64,000 bases of DNA from Selaginella moellendorffii (GCF_000143415.4 NW_003314352.1:674278-738277); one strand, 5' to 3'. Counted from the first letter of the stretch, positions 5,932 through 15,480 are shown. Notes: generated by a model not told the origin, from the sequence alone. Made by a program: numbers and translations.

Positions 5932-8500
5932 CTAGCTTTGCTTCACTTCCTCTTCCATCAAATGCCTCGCAATATTTCTCGACGAAGCTGATACTAGATG
6001 GTCCTGAAGAGCACAGGTCGATGATCCTCGCTCCTCCTTGACGTTCAATCTGTTATTCACAGCGGTGCTATCACTCGGAGCATTGGCGCTGCTTCTCTTT
6101 GGATTTGCTCCTCCACCACTGCTACCACTGCCTTTACCATCACCACCACTGGTATCACCACCACTAGCATTGTTGCTCGTCGTTGTCCGGCAGTATGGCA
6201 CGAACCCGGACCTTCTTCTGCCCTTGCTCGCAGAGCTGGAGAGGATAGACGAGAGCAAACTGGTATCCGAGGCCATGCTGGAGATTCCAAAGCTACTGCT
6301 GCTGCTGCTGGTCCTGTTGTTCGTGATCTTGTCGATGTCAAGGTTGCTGTTTTGTTTGCTCCACTCGCTGACAGTCTCCAGATCGCTCGTCTCACTCTCT
6401 GGCAAAGATTTCCTCTCATGCTGCTGCTGCTGCTGCTGGTCTTGTTGGAAACTGTTCCTCTGAGAAAACGTCTGAGGTAGCTTCTGGTGTGAGAAGAGAG
6501 CTTGGAACGCCATTCGGCCCTGGGAAAAAAAGATGGATGTCTTTAAACAGAAAAGGAAACGAAAAGGCTAACCCCTTGAGACACTTCCTTGCGTTGCTCC
6601 CCGTCCGAGCCGCTGCTACGAGCCGGCCTTGGATTTCTCTGGAACCTCCGGAACCGAGAGCAGTGATGACTGCTGGCATGCTGGAAGCTTGGAGCTTTGA
6701 ATGAAGCAGCTTCCTCGGTTAAAGCCTCTTCTCCCTCACTCTTATTCTTGTCGGACGAGGACTCCTCACTCTTCGCCGTGGCTTGAGCGGTGCCGCAGTG
6801 CGACGAGTTGGAGCTCGGGCCGCTGTTTCCAGATGCGTCTCCGTCACCATTCCCTTGTCCACCAGCGTCGCAGTGCCCGTTGCCATCGTCGCTTCCAGAC
6901 GAGGAAGGAGGTTGATCCTCTTTGAGAGATCGCGACTTCACTCGCCTCTTTCCAGCGTCCTTGTTTTCGAAGCTGCTGCTCAGCCTCTTAGAACTCGGTG
7001 AAATGTTCGAGTTGTCGTCATCATCTTGTGGCATTTCATCAATGCCATCCGGCTTCCTGTTTTTCGCTCCTCCGTGACGCTGGTCATGCCTGTCCGTCAT
7101 GTGAACTTCTGGATGAGGAACCATGCACTGAGGAAGGAAAGTCGGCTGTACAGAACCTTGCAATGCCCACCACGCTGAAGCTGCAGCGATCGTTGCAGCA
7201 GCAAAAGCAGCAGGGGAGTTGTCTGTGTTGTAGACGTCAGATGGTGTGCCCGTCAATACAGTTCTTATGACGGATGAAGTTAAGTCGTTGACATTGGGCA
7301 GGGTTGGCCAGTGTGGTGTCCCTGCCGCTGCCGCAGTATAAACTGAAGGTTGCCACAGAGGAAACGTCGGGTTACCTCCTCGGTCCATCCCCAGGTTGCA
7401 GAAGCTATAAGGCGGCGAGACTCTGTCCGAACCTTGCAAGCTCTCCCAAAACTTTGAGTAGTACAGCGCCACCAGCTCCTGTTGTTGATCAGCTACCGTC
7501 GAGGTTCCATCCTTGTTTGATCGGTTGTCACTTTGGCCGTTCGAGCTGTCATTCTCGGAAACCAGCATGCTAATGTCTGAGGCATTCTTTTCCCGTACTT
7601 CTTCAGATTCAGCGCCTGTAGCATCTTCCGGCACTTGCCCGTTCACCATCACTGCTCGAGTAACCGTAGGGACTACAACTGTATGACCGAATAACTTAAG
7701 CTCTTCCTGACATTTTTCCAGTACTTTTTCCATTGCCATAGTGGTAAGGCACTGCACAACCAGAACGATAGTAAAGACCAGCTTCGTAACAAGGAGAACG
7801 GCAAAGAAGATCGTACCTGTTTTCCGTCACAATCTGTTATAGGAAGAGCTCCTGGAGAAACTTCCATGCTTGCCTTACGCGGATACGGATGGCTTGGCTT
7901 TCGCTTCGGCCTAGGTGGAGGAATATCAATATCTTGAGCCGTACCTGGAACGATGCTTCCAGTTGCCTGTTCTTTTTCCAACTGGAAGGGAAACAAAGAA
8001 AAACCCCAAGTTCATTCCAAGTCCTTCAAACTCATTCCTTCAAACGCACCTTCGAGAAGAATTTTTGAGCATGGCTCCTTATCTGGACTGCAGTTTTGGT
8101 GCCAATATGTTCTGGAAAGAAAGAAAACTCAAATCAAAACTCCATGGTAAAGCTCTAGAACCTCACCTTCAATCCGACGCCATGCCCGACCATAGAGTTT
8201 CAAAGCCTCTAGAAACTTTTGATGTTCTTCTTCCGTCCACCTCTCTCGCTGCTTGGTGATCGTGTATGGCTTCCTTACCTGGATCAAAGGAAACTCCTTT
8301 GGTTGCGGACAAAACCAAAGCCCACGCCCACCTTGAAAAGTGAATCATCTCCAACCTCACCGAGCTGGTGCTTCACTGCCGGATCTCCCGGTAGAAAATT
8401 GGTTTCATCTCGCCCATCCTATGGCAGTCCCGAAAATCATTCACAAACAATTCCATGAAAGGCGGACCTGGCTGTACTTCCTCGCAGGTAAATCAGTCAT
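5932..8500 (-). CDS. LHY: CCA1/LHY-type single-MYB circadian clock transcription factor, ~741 aa; exons 8500-8468, 8418-8332, 8278-8167, 8111-8050, 7981-7817, 7751-6573, 6519-5932
   Basis: [113 protein letters not shown] and GFVPY are CCA1/LHY-specific motifs. All introns are GT-AG and preserve the frame. Confidence 0.93.
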
Positions 8501-9692: not shown

Positions 9693-9814
9693 ATAGCCCT
9701 GGAAGAACACCGGGAGACACTGATCAATGCAATCAACCCAGCATTTAGAGGACGAAGTTATGGGGTTTGTGTTTAAACAAGATGCCTCCCAGATTTTTTT
9801 GTGCTTTCGGAGAG

Positions 9815-10831
9815 ATGCCAAGCATCCTTTTTCGCAAGAAGCTGGCTATGGCGTGCTGCAAGATGTATGTATCCACCTCTTCCAATAGGCAGGCCATGGA
9901 GAACATAGAACAAGCAATGCGCGGCCACCCTCAAGTTCCACTGCTCCATACTTTCCGCGACGAGCATTACGACAGGGTGGGCTACACTCTCGCCGGCAAG
10001 TGCGGCTCTACAGCAAGCCGTGAAAATTTTGCGGACGCCATAGTCGATATGATACGAGCCGCAATATTGAACATTGATCTCCAAAAGCAGTCTGGAAGCC
10101 ATCCTCGTCTGGGTGTCGTGGACAATCTGTGCTTTCATCCACTGGGAAAGGAGGCTTCTATGGATCAAGCAGCTGAATTGGCTAGATCGTGTGCACGAAG
10201 TATTGGAGCTAAACTTCAAGGTAAGCAAAGCTGGTCTTTAAAGAAAAGAGAAACGAATCTATCTCGTTATCCAAGGCTAGATCGACTGACGCAGTACTTA
10301 TGCTTTGTATGATCTCCAGTTCCAACTTTTCTTTATGGTGCTGCTAGTTATGAAAATGTCCCGCTGGACGCAATTCGCAGATCTCTGGGCTACTTTAAGC
10401 CGGCAAAGCCTGGGATTTGGCAAGGATCATCGAACAACACAAGGTTATCACAGCCTCCACAATTCGGCCCAGCTCATTTTCCTGCCAGCACTGGGATTAT
10501 CACTGCGGGAGCTTGTCCCTGGATCGCCAACTACAACATCCCTCTCCAGACAGGCGATCTCCAAGCCGCTCGGAGAATCGCTCGCAGCGTGTCGCAGAGA
10601 GGCGGCGGCCTGGCTCACGTCCAGGCGATGGCTCTGGCTCACGGCGTGGACTCGATCGAGATTGCGTGCAACTTGCTCGATGTCCACGAGACCAGCCCTT
10701 CGAGTGTGCAGAGCTTCGTGGAGCTCCTGGCTAGAGACGAGCCATCAGTGGAACGAGTCTGCCTTGGCTACTTGACAAATCTCCAAGAGGAGTCCATCTT
10801 GGAGCTCGCAATGGAGAAGATGGAACCTTGA
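9815..10831 (+). CDS. Formiminotransferase N-terminal subdomain protein (plant glutamate formimidoyltransferase-like); intron 10221-10319; start could be 9782
   Basis: CCKMYVS, YDRVGYTL, IDLQKQSGSHPRLGVVDNLCFHPL, LQ|VPTFLYG, VSQRGGGLAHVQAMALAHG, IEIACNLL; ~305 aa. Confidence 0.88.
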
Positions 10832-10971
10832 AAAGGATCTATGAGATTTCATAAATAATTATTTTATAAGAAATAAAGGCCATTTAAAGTTATTTCTAAT
10901 CATTGTTTTTAAATGAATTTATTGAAGAAACCCTAGGGATTTTAGGTAAAGTATAATAGGTTTCGTGGATA

Positions 10972-13886
10972 ATGGCTTTGCGAAGAGGAGTCAAGCAATC
11001 TCGTGAATGTGTGGAGCAACACTGGCTCAGCTTCTTTGAGGATCCTGAGCTATGGTGGGACAATAGATCTAAAAATGTGAGTGTTCTTCCCATGGAGCAA
11101 TACCAGTACCTAGATTATAACTTGGCATTTCTCTACAGTGGGGCAACTATCCGGACTTCAAGCATTCGTCCACTGGAGTAGGACTGTGGATTGGTTCTTG
11201 CCCTGCTTGGCTGCAACCCAAGATTAAATGCCTAGAAGATGCTACAAATGGAGGTACTCGCAGAGCACACTACAAGAAAGATGATTATAGCATCGGGAAG
11301 AACTCGCATTCTCCGCTCACACAAGCTACCACCACGAGACAGCCATTGACATGCTTGGCGTTCCCAGAGAAGCTGCTGGCGGACTTGAAATCCTGCAACG
11401 ATTTGGAGGGCGGGAGGGAGCTCGAGAAGTCTGCCGCTTCCCAGGGCCAGGACGCGAGCGTCTACGTCGCGGCAGCACTGGTCAGCATGTACGCAAGGTG
11501 CGGCAGCCTGATAGATGCGAGAAGAGTTTTCGAGGCCATGGAAACTCGGGATACCAGGACGTGGAACGCTTTGCTGCTCGGGTACGTCAACAATGGGATG
11601 GGGGTTGCTGCGCTCGAGCTGTTCGAGCGCATGGTTTCGGATGGGTGTGCTCCGGATTCCAGGACTTTTGTAGCAGCAGCGAAGGCTTGCGGGATCTCTG
11701 CGGCAGCGGAGTTGGCAGAGCAGCAGCAGCAGCAAGGATCCAAGGCTGCTATCAAAGCGAAAAAGAGTCTGGAAACCGGTGTGGCGATCCACGCTCAGGC
11801 AAGAACGAAGGGGTTCGATACAGACATATATGTGGCGAACACGCTCGTTGGGATGTACGCGAAGTGTGGGGACATGGCCGCTGCTCGCGATGTGTTCGGC
11901 AGCATCCAGCAGCCCAGCGTGGTCTCGTGGAACGCTTTGCTGCTGGGATGTGTGGAGAATGGAGAGGCCGAGCTCGCCTTGCAGCTCTATGAAGAGATGG
12001 TGATCGGCGCGGAAGGAGGAACAGCTCCTCCACTTTCCGCGGAGACGTATGTCGCAGCTTTGAAGGCTTGTGTGGCTCTAGGCGCGGAAGAGCGGTGTCT
12101 CAAATTTGGGAGAAGCATTCACTCGCTAGCGCTTGCCAGCGGCTGCATGTCGAATCTCTACGTGAAGAGCACCATGATCGACATGTATGCCAGGTGTGGA
12201 AGCCTCGAGGACGCCAAGAAGGTTTTCGACTCCTCGCCGCAGCAAAACGCAGTCACCTGGAATGCCTTGCTGTTTGGATACGTCGAGAATGGACGCGCAC
12301 AGGCTGCTCTGGAACTCTTTGCGCGGATGAAATCGTCCACCAAAGATGGCGCTCGCTGTGCTCCCACTTCTCGGACTTATCTCGCAGCGGTGATGGCCTG
12401 CGCTGCTCTGGCTGCTCAAGAAGAAGCCACCGAGGTGGAGATTGGGCGGTTTGTGAGGCTTCAAACGCTGGAGAGAGGACGAGCTCTCCACCGCGAGGCC
12501 GTGAAGGTGGTGGGAGCGGACCTTGATTCAAGCGTCCTCTTCTCGAGCGCGCTGGTTGATATGTATGCGAAGTGTGGCTCCATGGTGGACGCCAGGCGGG
12601 TTTTCGATAGCGTGGCTCCGGCTAAGCGGGACGTTGTGCTCTGGACTGGCTTGATATGGGGATACGTCAATAGCGGGGAGAGCGAGCGAGCTTTGGAGCT
12701 TTACTCGCGCATGGCTGGCGATCAAGGCTCTCATGCTGGCATAAGCCCAAGTCCTCAAACTTATGGTGCTCTTCTCAAGGCCTGTGGCTCCGTCAACGCG
12801 CTGGAAGCTGGGGAGCAAATCCATGCCCAAATCGTGGGGCTCCTGGACAAGGATCCAATCCTGGTGACGTGTTTGATCGACTTCTACGGCAAAACAGGGA
12901 GAATGGCTGCTGCTCGCAAGGTGTTTGATCAGTGGATCTCCGTGACCAAGCATGATATCGCGGCCTGGAACGCGGTGATAGCGGGATATAGCCTCCAAGG
13001 TGATGCATTGGCGGTGTTTGAGATGCTGGAGAGAATGGAGGAGGAAGATGGCCTGGAGCCAAACGGGGTGACCTTCGTGTCGGTTTTGAGCGCTTGCAGC
13101 CATGCCGGTCTGGTCGAGGAGGCGAGGAAGTATTTTGCAGCGATGAGCAACAAGCATGGAATTTCTCCAGGGAGAGAGCACTACGTGTGCATGGTGGATC
13201 TGCTGGGCCGCGCAAACCGGTTTGGTGAGGCGGTAAACGTGATCGAATCCATGCCCATGAAGCCGGATGCGATCATCTGGAAGACGCTGCTCGGGGCGTG
13301 TCGAAAGTGGAAGAATGTGGCCGTGGGAGAGGTGGCTTTCGAGTCGCTGGTGGGGCTCGACGCGAGCAGCGCTGCGGCGTATGTTCTCATGGCCAACATA
13401 TACTCGAGCACAGGCAAGCTCGACGAGAGGAGCAAAGTTCTTGCTAGAAGGAATGTGGCCAAGGCTTGGAGGAAGCCGGGCAAAAGCTGGTGGACCGATT
13501 CCAGTGCCCGGGTCCATAGCTTTTTGGTCGGGAACACCACTCACGAGCAGATTGGAGAGATCCGTGCCAAGCTCGAGGAATTGGTGGCAAGGATGAAGGA
13601 GAATGGATATGCTGCTGACGTTGAGAGTGTGCTCAAGGATGTGAGCGATGGCGAGAAGGAGGACGCGCTTTGCCAGCACAGCGAGAAGCTTGCAGTCGCT
13701 TGTGCGTTGATCAATTCCAAGCCAGGAAGCGTGGTCAGGATTGCAAAGAACTTGAGAGTGTGCCAGGATTGTCACAAAGCCACCGCAATCATCTCCAAGC
13801 TGGAGGAGAGGGAGATCGTGTGTAGAGATGCGAGCAGGCTCCATATTTTTAAAGATGGACAATGCTCATGTGGTGATTATTTATAA
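10972..13886 (+). CDS. PLS-class PPR-E-DYW (DYW:WW-like) organellar RNA-editing factor with N-terminal OSB-type PDF motif; exons 10972-11076 and 11139-13886, ~950 aa
   Basis: Repeated LVxMYAxCGS..A..VF / WNALL.GY PPR motifs. E domain, then PGKSWW, HSEKLA, KNLRVCQDCH, CSCGDYL. The phase-0 intron GTGAGT..CTACAG joins WLSFFEDPELWWDNRSKN to WGNYPDFKHSSTGVGLWI, with no stop before the PPR ORF. Confidence 0.9.
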
Positions 13887-13989
13887 GACAAATAATTAGC
13901 TTGTAACAAAAGTGATGAATGAGCAAGTCATGGGCGCGCTCAAAACAATCTCTTGCTATCTCCAGAAAAAGATTACCCCAAATTCTGGG

Positions 13990-15480
13990 CTCAGTAATAG
14001 TCTTTTCGCAATATCCAGCTCTGAACCACAAGAGCAGTCTGAAATCCCCTGAACACCAAATCGCAATTGGGGATTCTGTCTCCAACTTTTATAATGATGT
14101 GGCCGTAATGGAAGCGGAAGGATTCTTGCTGAGGAGAACCGAATATAACCGCCCGTGATAAAATACTGCTGCAGTAATAATTCATTATGACGAATATCTT
14201 CTCTGCCATGCCAGATAAAGGACGTTCACCATGCCGAGGGCGTTCTGGATCCATGAAAGTAAGGAGCTCAACTCCATTGGAGAGGCAGATTTCCACCATG
14301 CGCCTCAACGGGACTAATCGAATCCAGCTCCAAGAGCTGGAAGGTGCAGAGACTATATCAGCTGGTAAGCGAGAAACTTCCGTCCCAAAGAAGCCAAAAG
14401 GGTTGCCACTCTTGACCAGCATTCGAATATCATTCCTGACGTGACATGGAAGACTGTTTGGCATGCAGATAGCCGCTAAGAGAAATCGACTACCAGTTTT
14501 CTCGCACCATTAGGTACTTCATATACCAAGTTCAGCTCCAGAGCACTTAGCAAATTCTCAGTATTTTTTCCACTGTCAACCTGCGGAGATAACGTAAGCA
14601 CGTTGACTTTGTGTGTGCAGTTTCGGTCAATGATGATGAGTTTGTCATACTTCATGGCCAGGAAGTGCAAATCATGGCAGAGTTCAGCGAAGTTCACCTG
14701 AAAGTTGGGAAAAGCCACACGGATTTCTTCCCATTCCTGCCCAGGAAGATCAACCCACCCAAGGAGCTTCCTACCGGTTGATTTTAGTGCGTTGAGGAGT
14801 TGTTCATTTACTTTGCAGCGCCTAGGGACATTCTTGAGCATCTAACTTCAGTGCAATGGCAGAAACAGCGAAGCTACGATCAACCTGACCTCTCTCATAT
14901 GCCATGTTCGCAGAATGCTGAAGATCCCGCTGCACTACTTCCTCAATGTCGCTAGAGGCAAACTGAATCAAGCAAGCCAGACTCTCGCACACACTCGTCT
15001 TGCACTTCTCCACCAGGGCAACACTTGATTCAAATATAAGGCAATGAGCTGCAAACATCAGTTTGATATTATCAACAGCAAGGTGTCTCTTTCACGTGAG
15101 TCACATCAGCCTGTAAGATCTGGTGACCCTTAGGCCACCACGTTCCACCACCTTGACTAGAGAGGATCTCCTGCTTAACAAAGATTTGTATGCAAAATTT
15201 TCAAATCTTTGCTTTTGGAGGGATGTGTGGCGGAATAGAAATGGCAATGGCGGCCATTGCCCCAAGCAACTTGTTTGGAAGCAGCTTCTTTGGAAGTGGG
15301 GTGGTGACCTCCTACAGTGACCTTCCAATGTAGGAGGAAGATCTTGTCTGCGGCTGGAGCAGTGATTAGTTGGCTGCTTGTGCTGCCGATTTCTCGTACA
15401 AGGGATTCATCAATCTGGGTGCAAGCCATCAGCAGCAGGAGTGCCTCTGGTGGGCTCTAGAGATTTTCATGAACAGCAAC
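13990..15480 (-). pseudogene. Chain of same-strand ORF fragments, probably a disrupted gene of unknown family
   Basis: Consecutive minus-strand ORFs (15175-15429, 14822-15058, 14476-14841, 13991-14464) with protein-like composition, broken by stops or frameshifts. No recognisable domain. Confidence 0.35.

What the first reader, a model, noticed from the sequence alone, without database searches (positions are those of the whole stretch)
10972..13886. Hidden in-frame fusion: OSB-type ssDNA-binding PDF motif + PPR array + DYW cytidine deaminase
Seen: the 69 aa ORF at 10972 and the 846 aa PPR ORF appear to be one gene. A 62 nt phase-0 intron (11077-11138, GTGAGT..CTACAG) yields HWLSFFEDPELWWDNRSKN|WGNYPDFKHSSTGVGLWIGSCPAWL, and 69 stop-free codons lead into the PPR frame; the 846 aa ORF itself opens at a TTG rather than an ATG. 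Established: W..FF..P..WWDNR.K....PDFKH..TG..LW is the PDF motif that binds ssDNA in plant organellar OSB proteins, and PLS-DYW proteins are C-to-U RNA editors. Inference: a deaminase tethered to single-stranded organellar DNA, either for co-transcriptional editing at nucleoids/R-loops or conceivably for DNA deamination, in a lineage where editing is very abundant. I do not know of a functional description of this architecture and cannot exclude that it has been noted.
Basis: partly seen in the sequence, partly recalled or inferred. Interest (0 to 1): 0.9.

Follow-up and report, generated by a model that had tools for sequence, protein, structure and literature searches.

The report
RNA editor with OSB/RBP40-type PDF module
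This spikemoss gene for an organelle RNA-editing enzyme really does begin with a small nucleic-acid-gripping 'PDF' module, an old pairing I found in liverworts, peat mosses, lycophytes and a fern but in no paper, and because an algal RNA-binding protein is built from the same module it more likely helps hold or open the RNA than aim the enzyme at DNA.

Summary
Observation confirmed. The 62-nt phase-0 intron (11077-11138) is spliced in an RNA-type contig. Both RefSeq models of this Selaginella moellendorffii gene already contain the join, unnamed. The N-terminus is a genuine PDF motif: 60 bits against an OSB-only profile, shuffles at most 5.5. The intron sits at the same codon as in a eucalypt OSB gene and in liverwort and peat-moss PDF-PPR genes. 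Behind it lie 17 PLS repeats, E1/E2 and a DYW domain with intact zinc sites, ending DYL. I retrieved about 70 PDF-PPR records from seed-free plants and none named from seed plants. No paper describes the pairing. This scan already found it at least eight times elsewhere in this genome. New here: the Chlamydomonas RNA-binding protein RBP40/RB38 is four PDF motifs and nothing else. It binds RNA non-specifically, is aimed by a helical-repeat partner and opens a stem-loop. Best reading: a C-to-U RNA editor with a built-in single-stranded-RNA gripping/unfolding module (about 0.55). A nucleoid tether is about 0.2, DNA deamination about 0.04. Function is untested.

The parts
10928..10935 (+). telo-box-like AAACCCTA in the 140-nt AT-rich spacer between the upstream FTCD_N gene and the ATG (putative promoter element)
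   Evidence: sequence; function inferred
10972..11076 (+). exon 1 coding part, 35 aa: about 14 aa N-terminal leader, then first half of the PDF motif (W..FF..P..WWDNR)
   Evidence: identical to residues 1-35 of both RefSeq models
10972..11013 (+). very short Arg-rich N-terminal leader; possible minimal organelle presequence, not tested
   Evidence: 4 R/K, 2 D/E in the first 17 aa; inference
11077..11138 (+). 62-nt GT-AG phase-0 intron inside the PDF motif, at the same codon as in OSB and other PDF-PPR genes
   Evidence: spliced in X4 contig, retained in X1; position shared with L001-L004 and L006
11139..11240 (+). second half of the PDF motif (PDFKH..TG..LW...P.W)
   Evidence: 32-40 bits to PDF profiles; conservation table
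11241..11357 (+). about 40-aa variable, probably disordered linker
   Evidence: 4 substitutions in 42 aa between the two RefSeq alleles versus 0 in the first 66 aa; pLDDT under 50 in a single-sequence model
11358..13268 (+). PLS-type PPR array, 17 motifs: L-S-(P-L-S)x4-P2-L2-S2
   Evidence: Pfam PPR/PPR_2; hand-anchored motif parse and code residues
13269..13469 (+). E1 and E2 motifs
   Evidence: Pfam E_motif E=1.8e-7
13470..13886 (+). DYW cytidine deaminase domain: 136 aa from the PG box (PGKSWW type), HxE(x)25CxxC at 13677-13772 and H(x)22H(x)6CxC intact, ends D-Y-L-stop
   Evidence: Pfam DYW_deaminase E=3.5e-36

Best explanation
A nuclear gene for an organellar C-to-U RNA editing factor (PLS-PPR-E1-E2-DYW) carrying one N-terminal PDF module captured long ago from an OSB-type gene. 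SHOWN: spliced single ORF; motif identity; shared intron; intact zinc ligands; wide occurrence in seed-free land plants. FROM ESTABLISHED KNOWLEDGE: PLS repeats read one base each 5' of the target C, and the DYW domain deaminates it. INFERRED: the PDF module is a sequence-non-specific single-strand binder that grips the RNA just 5' of the PPR site and keeps it unpaired, raising on-rate and editing efficiency. This is the division of labour seen in trans between RBP40 (four PDF motifs; non-specific RNA binding, stem-loop opening) and the helical-repeat protein Nac2 (specificity), and is comparable to what ORRM/MORF helpers give seed-plant editosomes. It would matter most in GC-rich, heavily edited organelle transcripts such as those of Selaginella (own knowledge).
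For: Splice and frame. Motif; predicted fold pLDDT 91 and TM 0.92 to an OSB/SSB cluster. RBP40 link: the published RBP40 forward primer (PMC3570535) matches 20/20 and in frame 66 nt before the annotated start of Chlamydomonas incerta P0337; P0337 has four PDF motifs at 55-59 bits; its 4xPDF relative P0192 has no OB fold. RBP40 alone binds any RNA, gains psbD specificity with Nac2 and destabilises a stem-loop (PMC3570535, PMC3555230). The PDF is N-terminal to the PPR array in 70 of 70 carriers and within about 8 residues of it in 50; no carrier has an OB fold. Code residues are largely canonical (ND, NS, SN, SD, TD, NN). MORFs are confined to seed plants (PMC13386178); PDF-PPRs were retrieved only from seed-free plants.
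Against: No binding or editing assay exists for any PDF-PPR. OSB1/OSB2 bind ssDNA in preference to RNA, and the PPR-borne PDFs share an intron with, and group weakly near, land-plant OSB motifs rather than RBP40. A single PDF may bind far more weakly than four. Most Selaginella DYW proteins retrieved lack the motif, so it is not needed for editing in general. In this copy the nearly invariant Lys after WWDNR is shifted by one residue, the linker is longer than usual, the leader is very short, and the terminal Trp is Leu (W-to-A lowers editing: PMC13324415, PMC7611903), so this paralogue may be weak.
Confidence: 0.55

Rival explanations
1. Nucleoid tether: the PDF module binds ssDNA (transcription bubbles, R-loops) or OSB-coated DNA and holds the RNA editor at the nucleoid for co-transcriptional editing; the substrate is still RNA.
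For: The PDF of AtOSB1 suffices for ssDNA binding (PMC6963530); OSBs prefer ssDNA; origin from an OSB gene is shown by the shared introns; invariant aromatic/basic residues are kept.
Against: RBP40 shows the module is not DNA-specific; the tight PDF-to-PPR spacing in most homologues fits contact with the same strand rather than a flexible tether; no localisation data.
Confidence: 0.2
2. Protein-side role: the PDF is an N-terminal cap or an oligomerisation/partner-binding module that stabilises the PLS solenoid or recruits other editosome parts (a MORF-like job).
For: It packs directly before the first repeat in most homologues; AtOSB2 is a tetramer; it is found where MORFs are absent; many carriers lack DYW and would need a partner.
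Against: The conserved W/R/K/H positions are the same as in the nucleic-acid-binding OSB and RBP40 motifs; up to three tandem copies occur; in this gene a 40-aa linker separates it from the array.
Confidence: 0.11
3. Passenger: the PDF exons came along with a promoter/transit-peptide cassette that PPR retrocopies acquired, and are now inert or removed on import, at least in this paralogue.
For: Carriers are not one clade on the E/DYW tree (p-AU 1e-8), which fits a 5' cassette moved onto different bodies; this copy has a shifted Lys, a DYL end and only about 14 residues before the motif.
Against: Invariant residues are held from liverwort to lycophyte and fern; no substitutions in the first 66 aa between alleles that differ at 20 other positions (small numbers); in moss and liverwort homologues the motif follows a 40-100-aa leader, so it lies in the mature protein.
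Confidence: 0.1
4. DNA editor: the PDF loads the protein on ssDNA, the PPR array reads DNA sequence and the DYW domain deaminates dC in organellar DNA.
For: Designer PPRs can bind ssDNA (cited in PMC9508816); the DYW-like bacterial SsdA deaminates ssDNA (PMC11789416, PMC12494967 abstracts); the PDF binds ssDNA in OSBs.
Against: No report of plant DYW activity on DNA turned up; the body is an ordinary PLS-E-DYW editor nested among Selaginella DYW proteins without PDF; about 40% of carriers lack DYW; fixing C to T in DNA once would remove any lasting need for the factor (inference).
Confidence: 0.04

Closest known systems
PLS-class PPR-DYW C-to-U editing factors (moss PPR56/PPR65, Arabidopsis OTP86)
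   Same: PLS array, P2-L2-S2, E1, E2, 136-aa DYW domain with both zinc sites
   Different: extra N-terminal PDF module split by an OSB-type intron; PGxSWW-type PG box shared with other Selaginella DYWs; ends DYL; very short leader
OSB1-4 organellar ssDNA-binding proteins
   Same: PDF motif (60 bits to an OSB-only profile), same predicted fold, same internal phase-0 intron
   Different: no OB/SSB-like fold; the PDF is N-terminal and single here, C-terminal and often repeated in OSBs; joined to PPR-DYW
Chlamydomonas RBP40/RB38 with Nac2
   Same: RBP40 consists of four PDF motifs; it is a non-specific RNA binder aimed by a helical-repeat protein
   Different: two proteins in trans acting on psbD translation, against one polypeptide with a deaminase here; RBP40-type motifs form a separate branch
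Fusions of editosome helper domains (ORRM1 MORF-RRM; RRM-PPR, MORF-PPR, RanBP2-PPR; PMC13386178)
   Same: accessory nucleic-acid- or protein-binding domain fused to editing-factor domains
   Different: that survey does not mention PDF or OSB; the PDF fusion is expanded into families of 50 or more members

Membership tests
PLS-DYW RNA editing factor | PLS-type PPR array ending P2-L2-S2 | tested here: met
   17 motifs parsed; Pfam PPR_2 E=1e-61
PLS-DYW RNA editing factor | E1 and E2 motifs before the deaminase | tested here: met
PLS-DYW RNA editing factor | DYW domain with PG box, HxE(x)25CxxC and second zinc site H(x)22H(x)6CxC | tested here: met
   regex matches, 136 aa from PG
PLS-DYW RNA editing factor | terminal D-Y-W tripeptide | tested here: inconclusive
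   ends D-Y-L here and in XP_024524782.1; a paralogue ends DYF; W-to-A reduces but does not define activity
PLS-DYW RNA editing factor | organelle targeting peptide / import | not testable with these tools
   only about 14 residues precede the PDF; no predictor available
PLS-DYW RNA editing factor | C-to-U editing of a matching organellar site | not testable with these tools
U-to-C type DYW:KP | KPAxA-type box in place of the PG box | tested here: not met
   PGKSWW and HSE present; KP group described in PMC9478123
PDF motif (OSB type) | about 50-aa motif with W..P..WWDxR..K..PDFKH..LW..P.W | tested here: met
   60 bits, profile positions 3-58 of 61; all near-invariant columns kept except the Lys, shifted by one
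PDF motif (OSB type) | ssDNA binding | not testable with these tools
   needs a binding assay
OSB protein | central OB/SSB-like fold | tested here: not met
   no SSB hit in the window protein; 0 of 69 PDF-PPRs carry it
OSB protein | PDF motif(s) at the C-terminus | tested here: not met
   N-terminal to the PPR array in 70 of 70 carriers
RBP40/RB38 | four tandem PDF motifs and no other domain | tested here: not met
   one motif, fused to PPR-DYW

The most novel reading that the evidence does not exclude
PDF-PPR-DYW proteins are natural, sequence-programmed deaminases that are loaded on single-stranded organellar DNA (R-loops, replication intermediates) and convert dC to dU in the genome as well as, or instead of, editing RNA.
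Probability: 0.04. Interest if true: 0.9.

Novelty: new variant of a known kind. Interest (0 to 1): 0.55.

Why it matters
Seed-free plants do large amounts of organellar editing without MORF helpers, and their PPR-DYW proteins are treated as self-sufficient. An old, expanded subclass with its own single-strand-binding module would be an unrecognised part of those editosomes, missed because Pfam has no PDF model and the OSB survey required an OB fold. The RBP40 link turns a vague 'DNA tether' idea into a specific, cheap test (edit a structured target in E. coli with and without the module) and ties OSB, RBP40 and PPR editors to one domain family. If the module raises editing on structured RNA it is a ready part for engineered PPR editors. 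If it links editors to nucleoids it makes co-transcriptional editing testable.

Tried and rejected
Alternative splice joins: about 20 other GT..AG pairs keep the frame, but only 11076/11139 is seen in a contig. TTG start at 11346: an artefact of the bacterial ORF caller. Pfam on exon 1, on the first 69 aa of exon 2 and on the unspliced 69-aa ORF: no family. Single-sequence AlphaFold of exon 2: pLDDT 54, used only for gross layout. PDB: no relative of the PDF module by sequence or fold (best Z 3.1, meaningless). ESM Atlas feature search: nothing usable. Zaegel 2006 and Schwarz 2007 could not be read; claims about them rest on reviews. The RBP40 reverse primer did not match C. incerta within 3 mismatches, though the protein ends in the same ARY; my memory that RB38 has four repeats was only a lead until the primer test. 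A Chenopodium OSB-like gene has no intron in its PDFs, so the intron is not universal in OSBs. One origin for PPR-borne PDFs is neither shown nor excluded (60 columns). Four contig look-ups returned nothing and one returned no DNA. Target prediction against organelle transcripts could not be run. Following the operators' note, the window's own joined model was never sent to a search or fold tool: the window was searched exon by exon, and joins were built only inside one script to test the frame. I did search and score the public RefSeq record P0001 by reference, including residues 12-70, which span the same junction and are identical to the window there. The folded PDF is that of paralogue P0215.

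Full report
Source and gene. The window is Selaginella moellendorffii: exon 2 matches RefSeq XP_024524782.1 at 97% over its full length and XP_024518415.1 at 100% over residues 1-911. Exon 1 (10972-11076, 35 codons), a 62-nt GT-AG phase-0 intron and exon 2 (11139-13886, 915 codons plus stop) give a 950-aa protein. The 846-aa ORF starting at TTG is only the bacterial caller's view of exon 2.

Splicing. One 1592-nt contig of run X4 joins 11076 to 11139 and runs on to 12682, well inside the PPR array; the DNA-type run X1 keeps the intron and shows 12 nt of indels within it. X4 is RNA only by the tool's guess and the support is one contig in one run; X9 and X16 do not reach the junction, but they splice the neighbouring FTCD_N intron, a positive control for the method. 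Both RefSeq models make the same join. So the fusion is real, and it is already in the databases without a name for the domain. XP_024518415.1 models a different 3' end; an X4 contig covering 13355-13932 reads straight through the DYL stop.

The motif. phmmer with residues 12-70 of the RefSeq protein found 349 representatives at E up to 0.001, among them an OSB3-like protein with an SSB-family fold. A profile built only from 201 PDF segments of 80 OB-fold-bearing proteins scores the RefSeq N-terminus at 60 bits, window exon 1 at 22.8 and exon 2 at 32.0 on complementary halves, shuffles at most 5.5. All near-invariant columns are kept except the Lys after WWDNR, shifted by one residue. The PDF of paralogue P0215 folds confidently (pLDDT 91) and matches an OSB/SSB cluster at TM 0.92 and three PPR/DYW clusters of 127, 57 and 63 members at TM 0.80-0.87. 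It has no solved relative and no Pfam model.

Origin. The intron lies three codons after the Arg of WWDNR. The same phase-0 position is used in two other Selaginella PDF-PPR genes, in Calypogeia and in Sphagnum, and in both PDF motifs of a Corymbia OSB gene. The Corymbia motifs, like the Calypogeia and Sphagnum ones, are also preceded by a phase-1 intron. This is good evidence that the module came from an OSB-type gene by exon capture. A Chenopodium OSB-like gene lacks the intron. On an E/DYW tree the carriers fall on three lineages: a liverwort-moss-Diphasiastrum clade (SH-aLRT 99), one Diphasiastrum protein, and the Selaginella PGxSWW clade holding this gene; one clade is rejected (p-AU 1e-8; 18 truncated or duplicate models left out; 'no PDF' may reflect short gene models). 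The four Selaginella PDFs form a clade (96); deeper nodes are unresolved. Either the 5' cassette moved between PPR bodies or it is old and was often lost.

Distribution. All 48 hits to a Diphasiastrum PDF among proteins of 526-1675 aa carry PPR repeats; the named ones are Diphasiastrum, Sphagnum and Calypogeia. Further carriers are Selaginella and Adiantum. In hand: 69 PDF-PPR records (isoforms and near-copies included), 40 with DYW, none with an OB fold; the PDF precedes the array in 70 of 70 and lies within about 8 residues of it in 50. None of 38 seed-plant PPRs among the hits (Cryptomeria, Typha, and Gb_ records that I read as Ginkgo) has it. The search is not exhaustive. MORFs are limited to seed plants (PMC13386178).

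The editor body. L-S-(P-L-S)x4-P2-L2-S2, E1, E2 and a 136-aa DYW domain with HxE(x)25CxxC and H(x)22H(x)6CxC. Most P and S code pairs are canonical (ND, NS, NS, SN, SD, TD, NN). The PG box is PGKSWW, like other Selaginella DYWs and unlike the U-to-C KP type. It ends DYL; alanine at the terminal Trp lowers editing in model factors (PMC13324415, PMC7611903). Only about 14 residues precede the PDF, against 40-100 in moss and liverwort homologues, so import of this copy is unverified.

What the module binds. Reviews state that the AtOSB1 PDF suffices for ssDNA binding and that OSBs prefer ssDNA to RNA (PMC6963530, PMC4166229). But the hits also held volvocine proteins of four PDF motifs without an OB fold. 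The published forward primer for Chlamydomonas reinhardtii RBP40/RB38 (PMC3570535) matches the C. incerta gene of one of them, P0337, 20/20 and in frame, with none expected by chance; its four repeats score 55-59 bits on the OSB-only profile. RBP40 on its own binds any RNA, gets psbD specificity from Nac2 (a TPR/HAT-type helical-repeat protein, own knowledge), binds a U-rich element and destabilises a stem-loop (PMC3570535, PMC3555230). So PDF is a single-strand binder for RNA as well as DNA, and it already works with a helical-repeat specificity factor in trans. The PDF-PPR-DYW protein reads as the fused form of that logic. PPR arrays run N-to-C along RNA 5'-to-3' (established), so an N-terminal PDF would sit on the RNA just upstream of the recognised sequence.

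Mechanism and odds. Best: a C-to-U RNA editor whose PDF grips and keeps open the RNA 5' of its site (0.55). Rivals: ssDNA/nucleoid tether for co-transcriptional editing (0.2); cap or partner-binding module (0.11); passenger or cleaved (0.1); DNA deaminase (0.04). Shown: gene structure, motif identity, shared intron, spread, intact zinc ligands, RBP40 homology. Inferred: import, target, the module's ligand and effect.

Novelty. No searchable paper holds 'PDF domain', 'PPR' and 'RNA editing' together; related searches found no description. The 2026 OSB survey never mentions PPR and kept only proteins with both PDF and OB folds (PMC13393729); the 2026 editing-factor survey never mentions PDF or OSB. 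Subscription papers (Zaegel 2006, Gutmann 2020) could not be read and may remark on it. This scan had already recorded the same architecture on at least eight other pieces of this genome; none of its notes mentions RBP40 or RB38. Verdict: a real, old and apparently undescribed variant of PPR-DYW editing factors; this locus is one of many and perhaps not the most active. Interest 0.55.

Handling note. The window's joined model was not sent to any search or fold tool; the public RefSeq protein P0001, identical across the junction, was used by reference (see Tried and rejected).

Noticed in passing
ESM Atlas rows 5-6 for the PDF model: Two clusters of phage (Uroviricota) hypothetical proteins of 187-199 aa match the PDF fold at TM 0.71 and 0.64 over about 60 residues; a possible viral or bacterial source of a motif described as plant-specific.
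   Followed up: no
L007:5935-8797: Chlamydomonas incerta RBP40/RB38 orthologue: the annotated start (6001) is 22 codons downstream of the ATG that matches the published RBP40 primer; the protein is four PDF motifs.
   Followed up: yes
proteins P0123-P0269: Many OB-less proteins of 3-11 tandem PDF motifs with signal-peptide-like N-termini; one cluster has a member from the dinoflagellate Zooxanthella nutricula, so PDF repeats extend beyond green plants.
   Followed up: partly
L001:1427-1567: The closest Selaginella paralogue (XP_024543124.1) starts only three residues before the PDF and 73 nt after an LCAT-like gene: no room for a transit peptide in the annotated model.
   Followed up: partly
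window 13872-14085: RefSeq XP_024518415.1 splices after ...CSC into downstream sequence and replaces the DYL end with about 50 other residues; an X4 contig reads through the DYL stop instead.
   Followed up: partly
window 9767-10831 (+): Upstream neighbour is an FTCD_N (formiminotransferase-like) gene with a 99-nt intron near 10221-10319, spliced in X9 and X16; only 140 nt separate its stop from the PDF-PPR ATG. X4 shows no contig over this gene.
   Followed up: partly
window 8129-8287 (-): Myb DNA-binding exon of an LHY/RVE-like gene (Pfam PF00249).
   Followed up: no
window 13991-14841 (-): Convergent downstream coding pieces with no Pfam match.
   Followed up: no
P0282 (Diphasiastrum, 1362 aa): Carries a second PDF ending near residue 737, inside the protein; probably a tandem duplication or two merged genes.
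   Followed up: no
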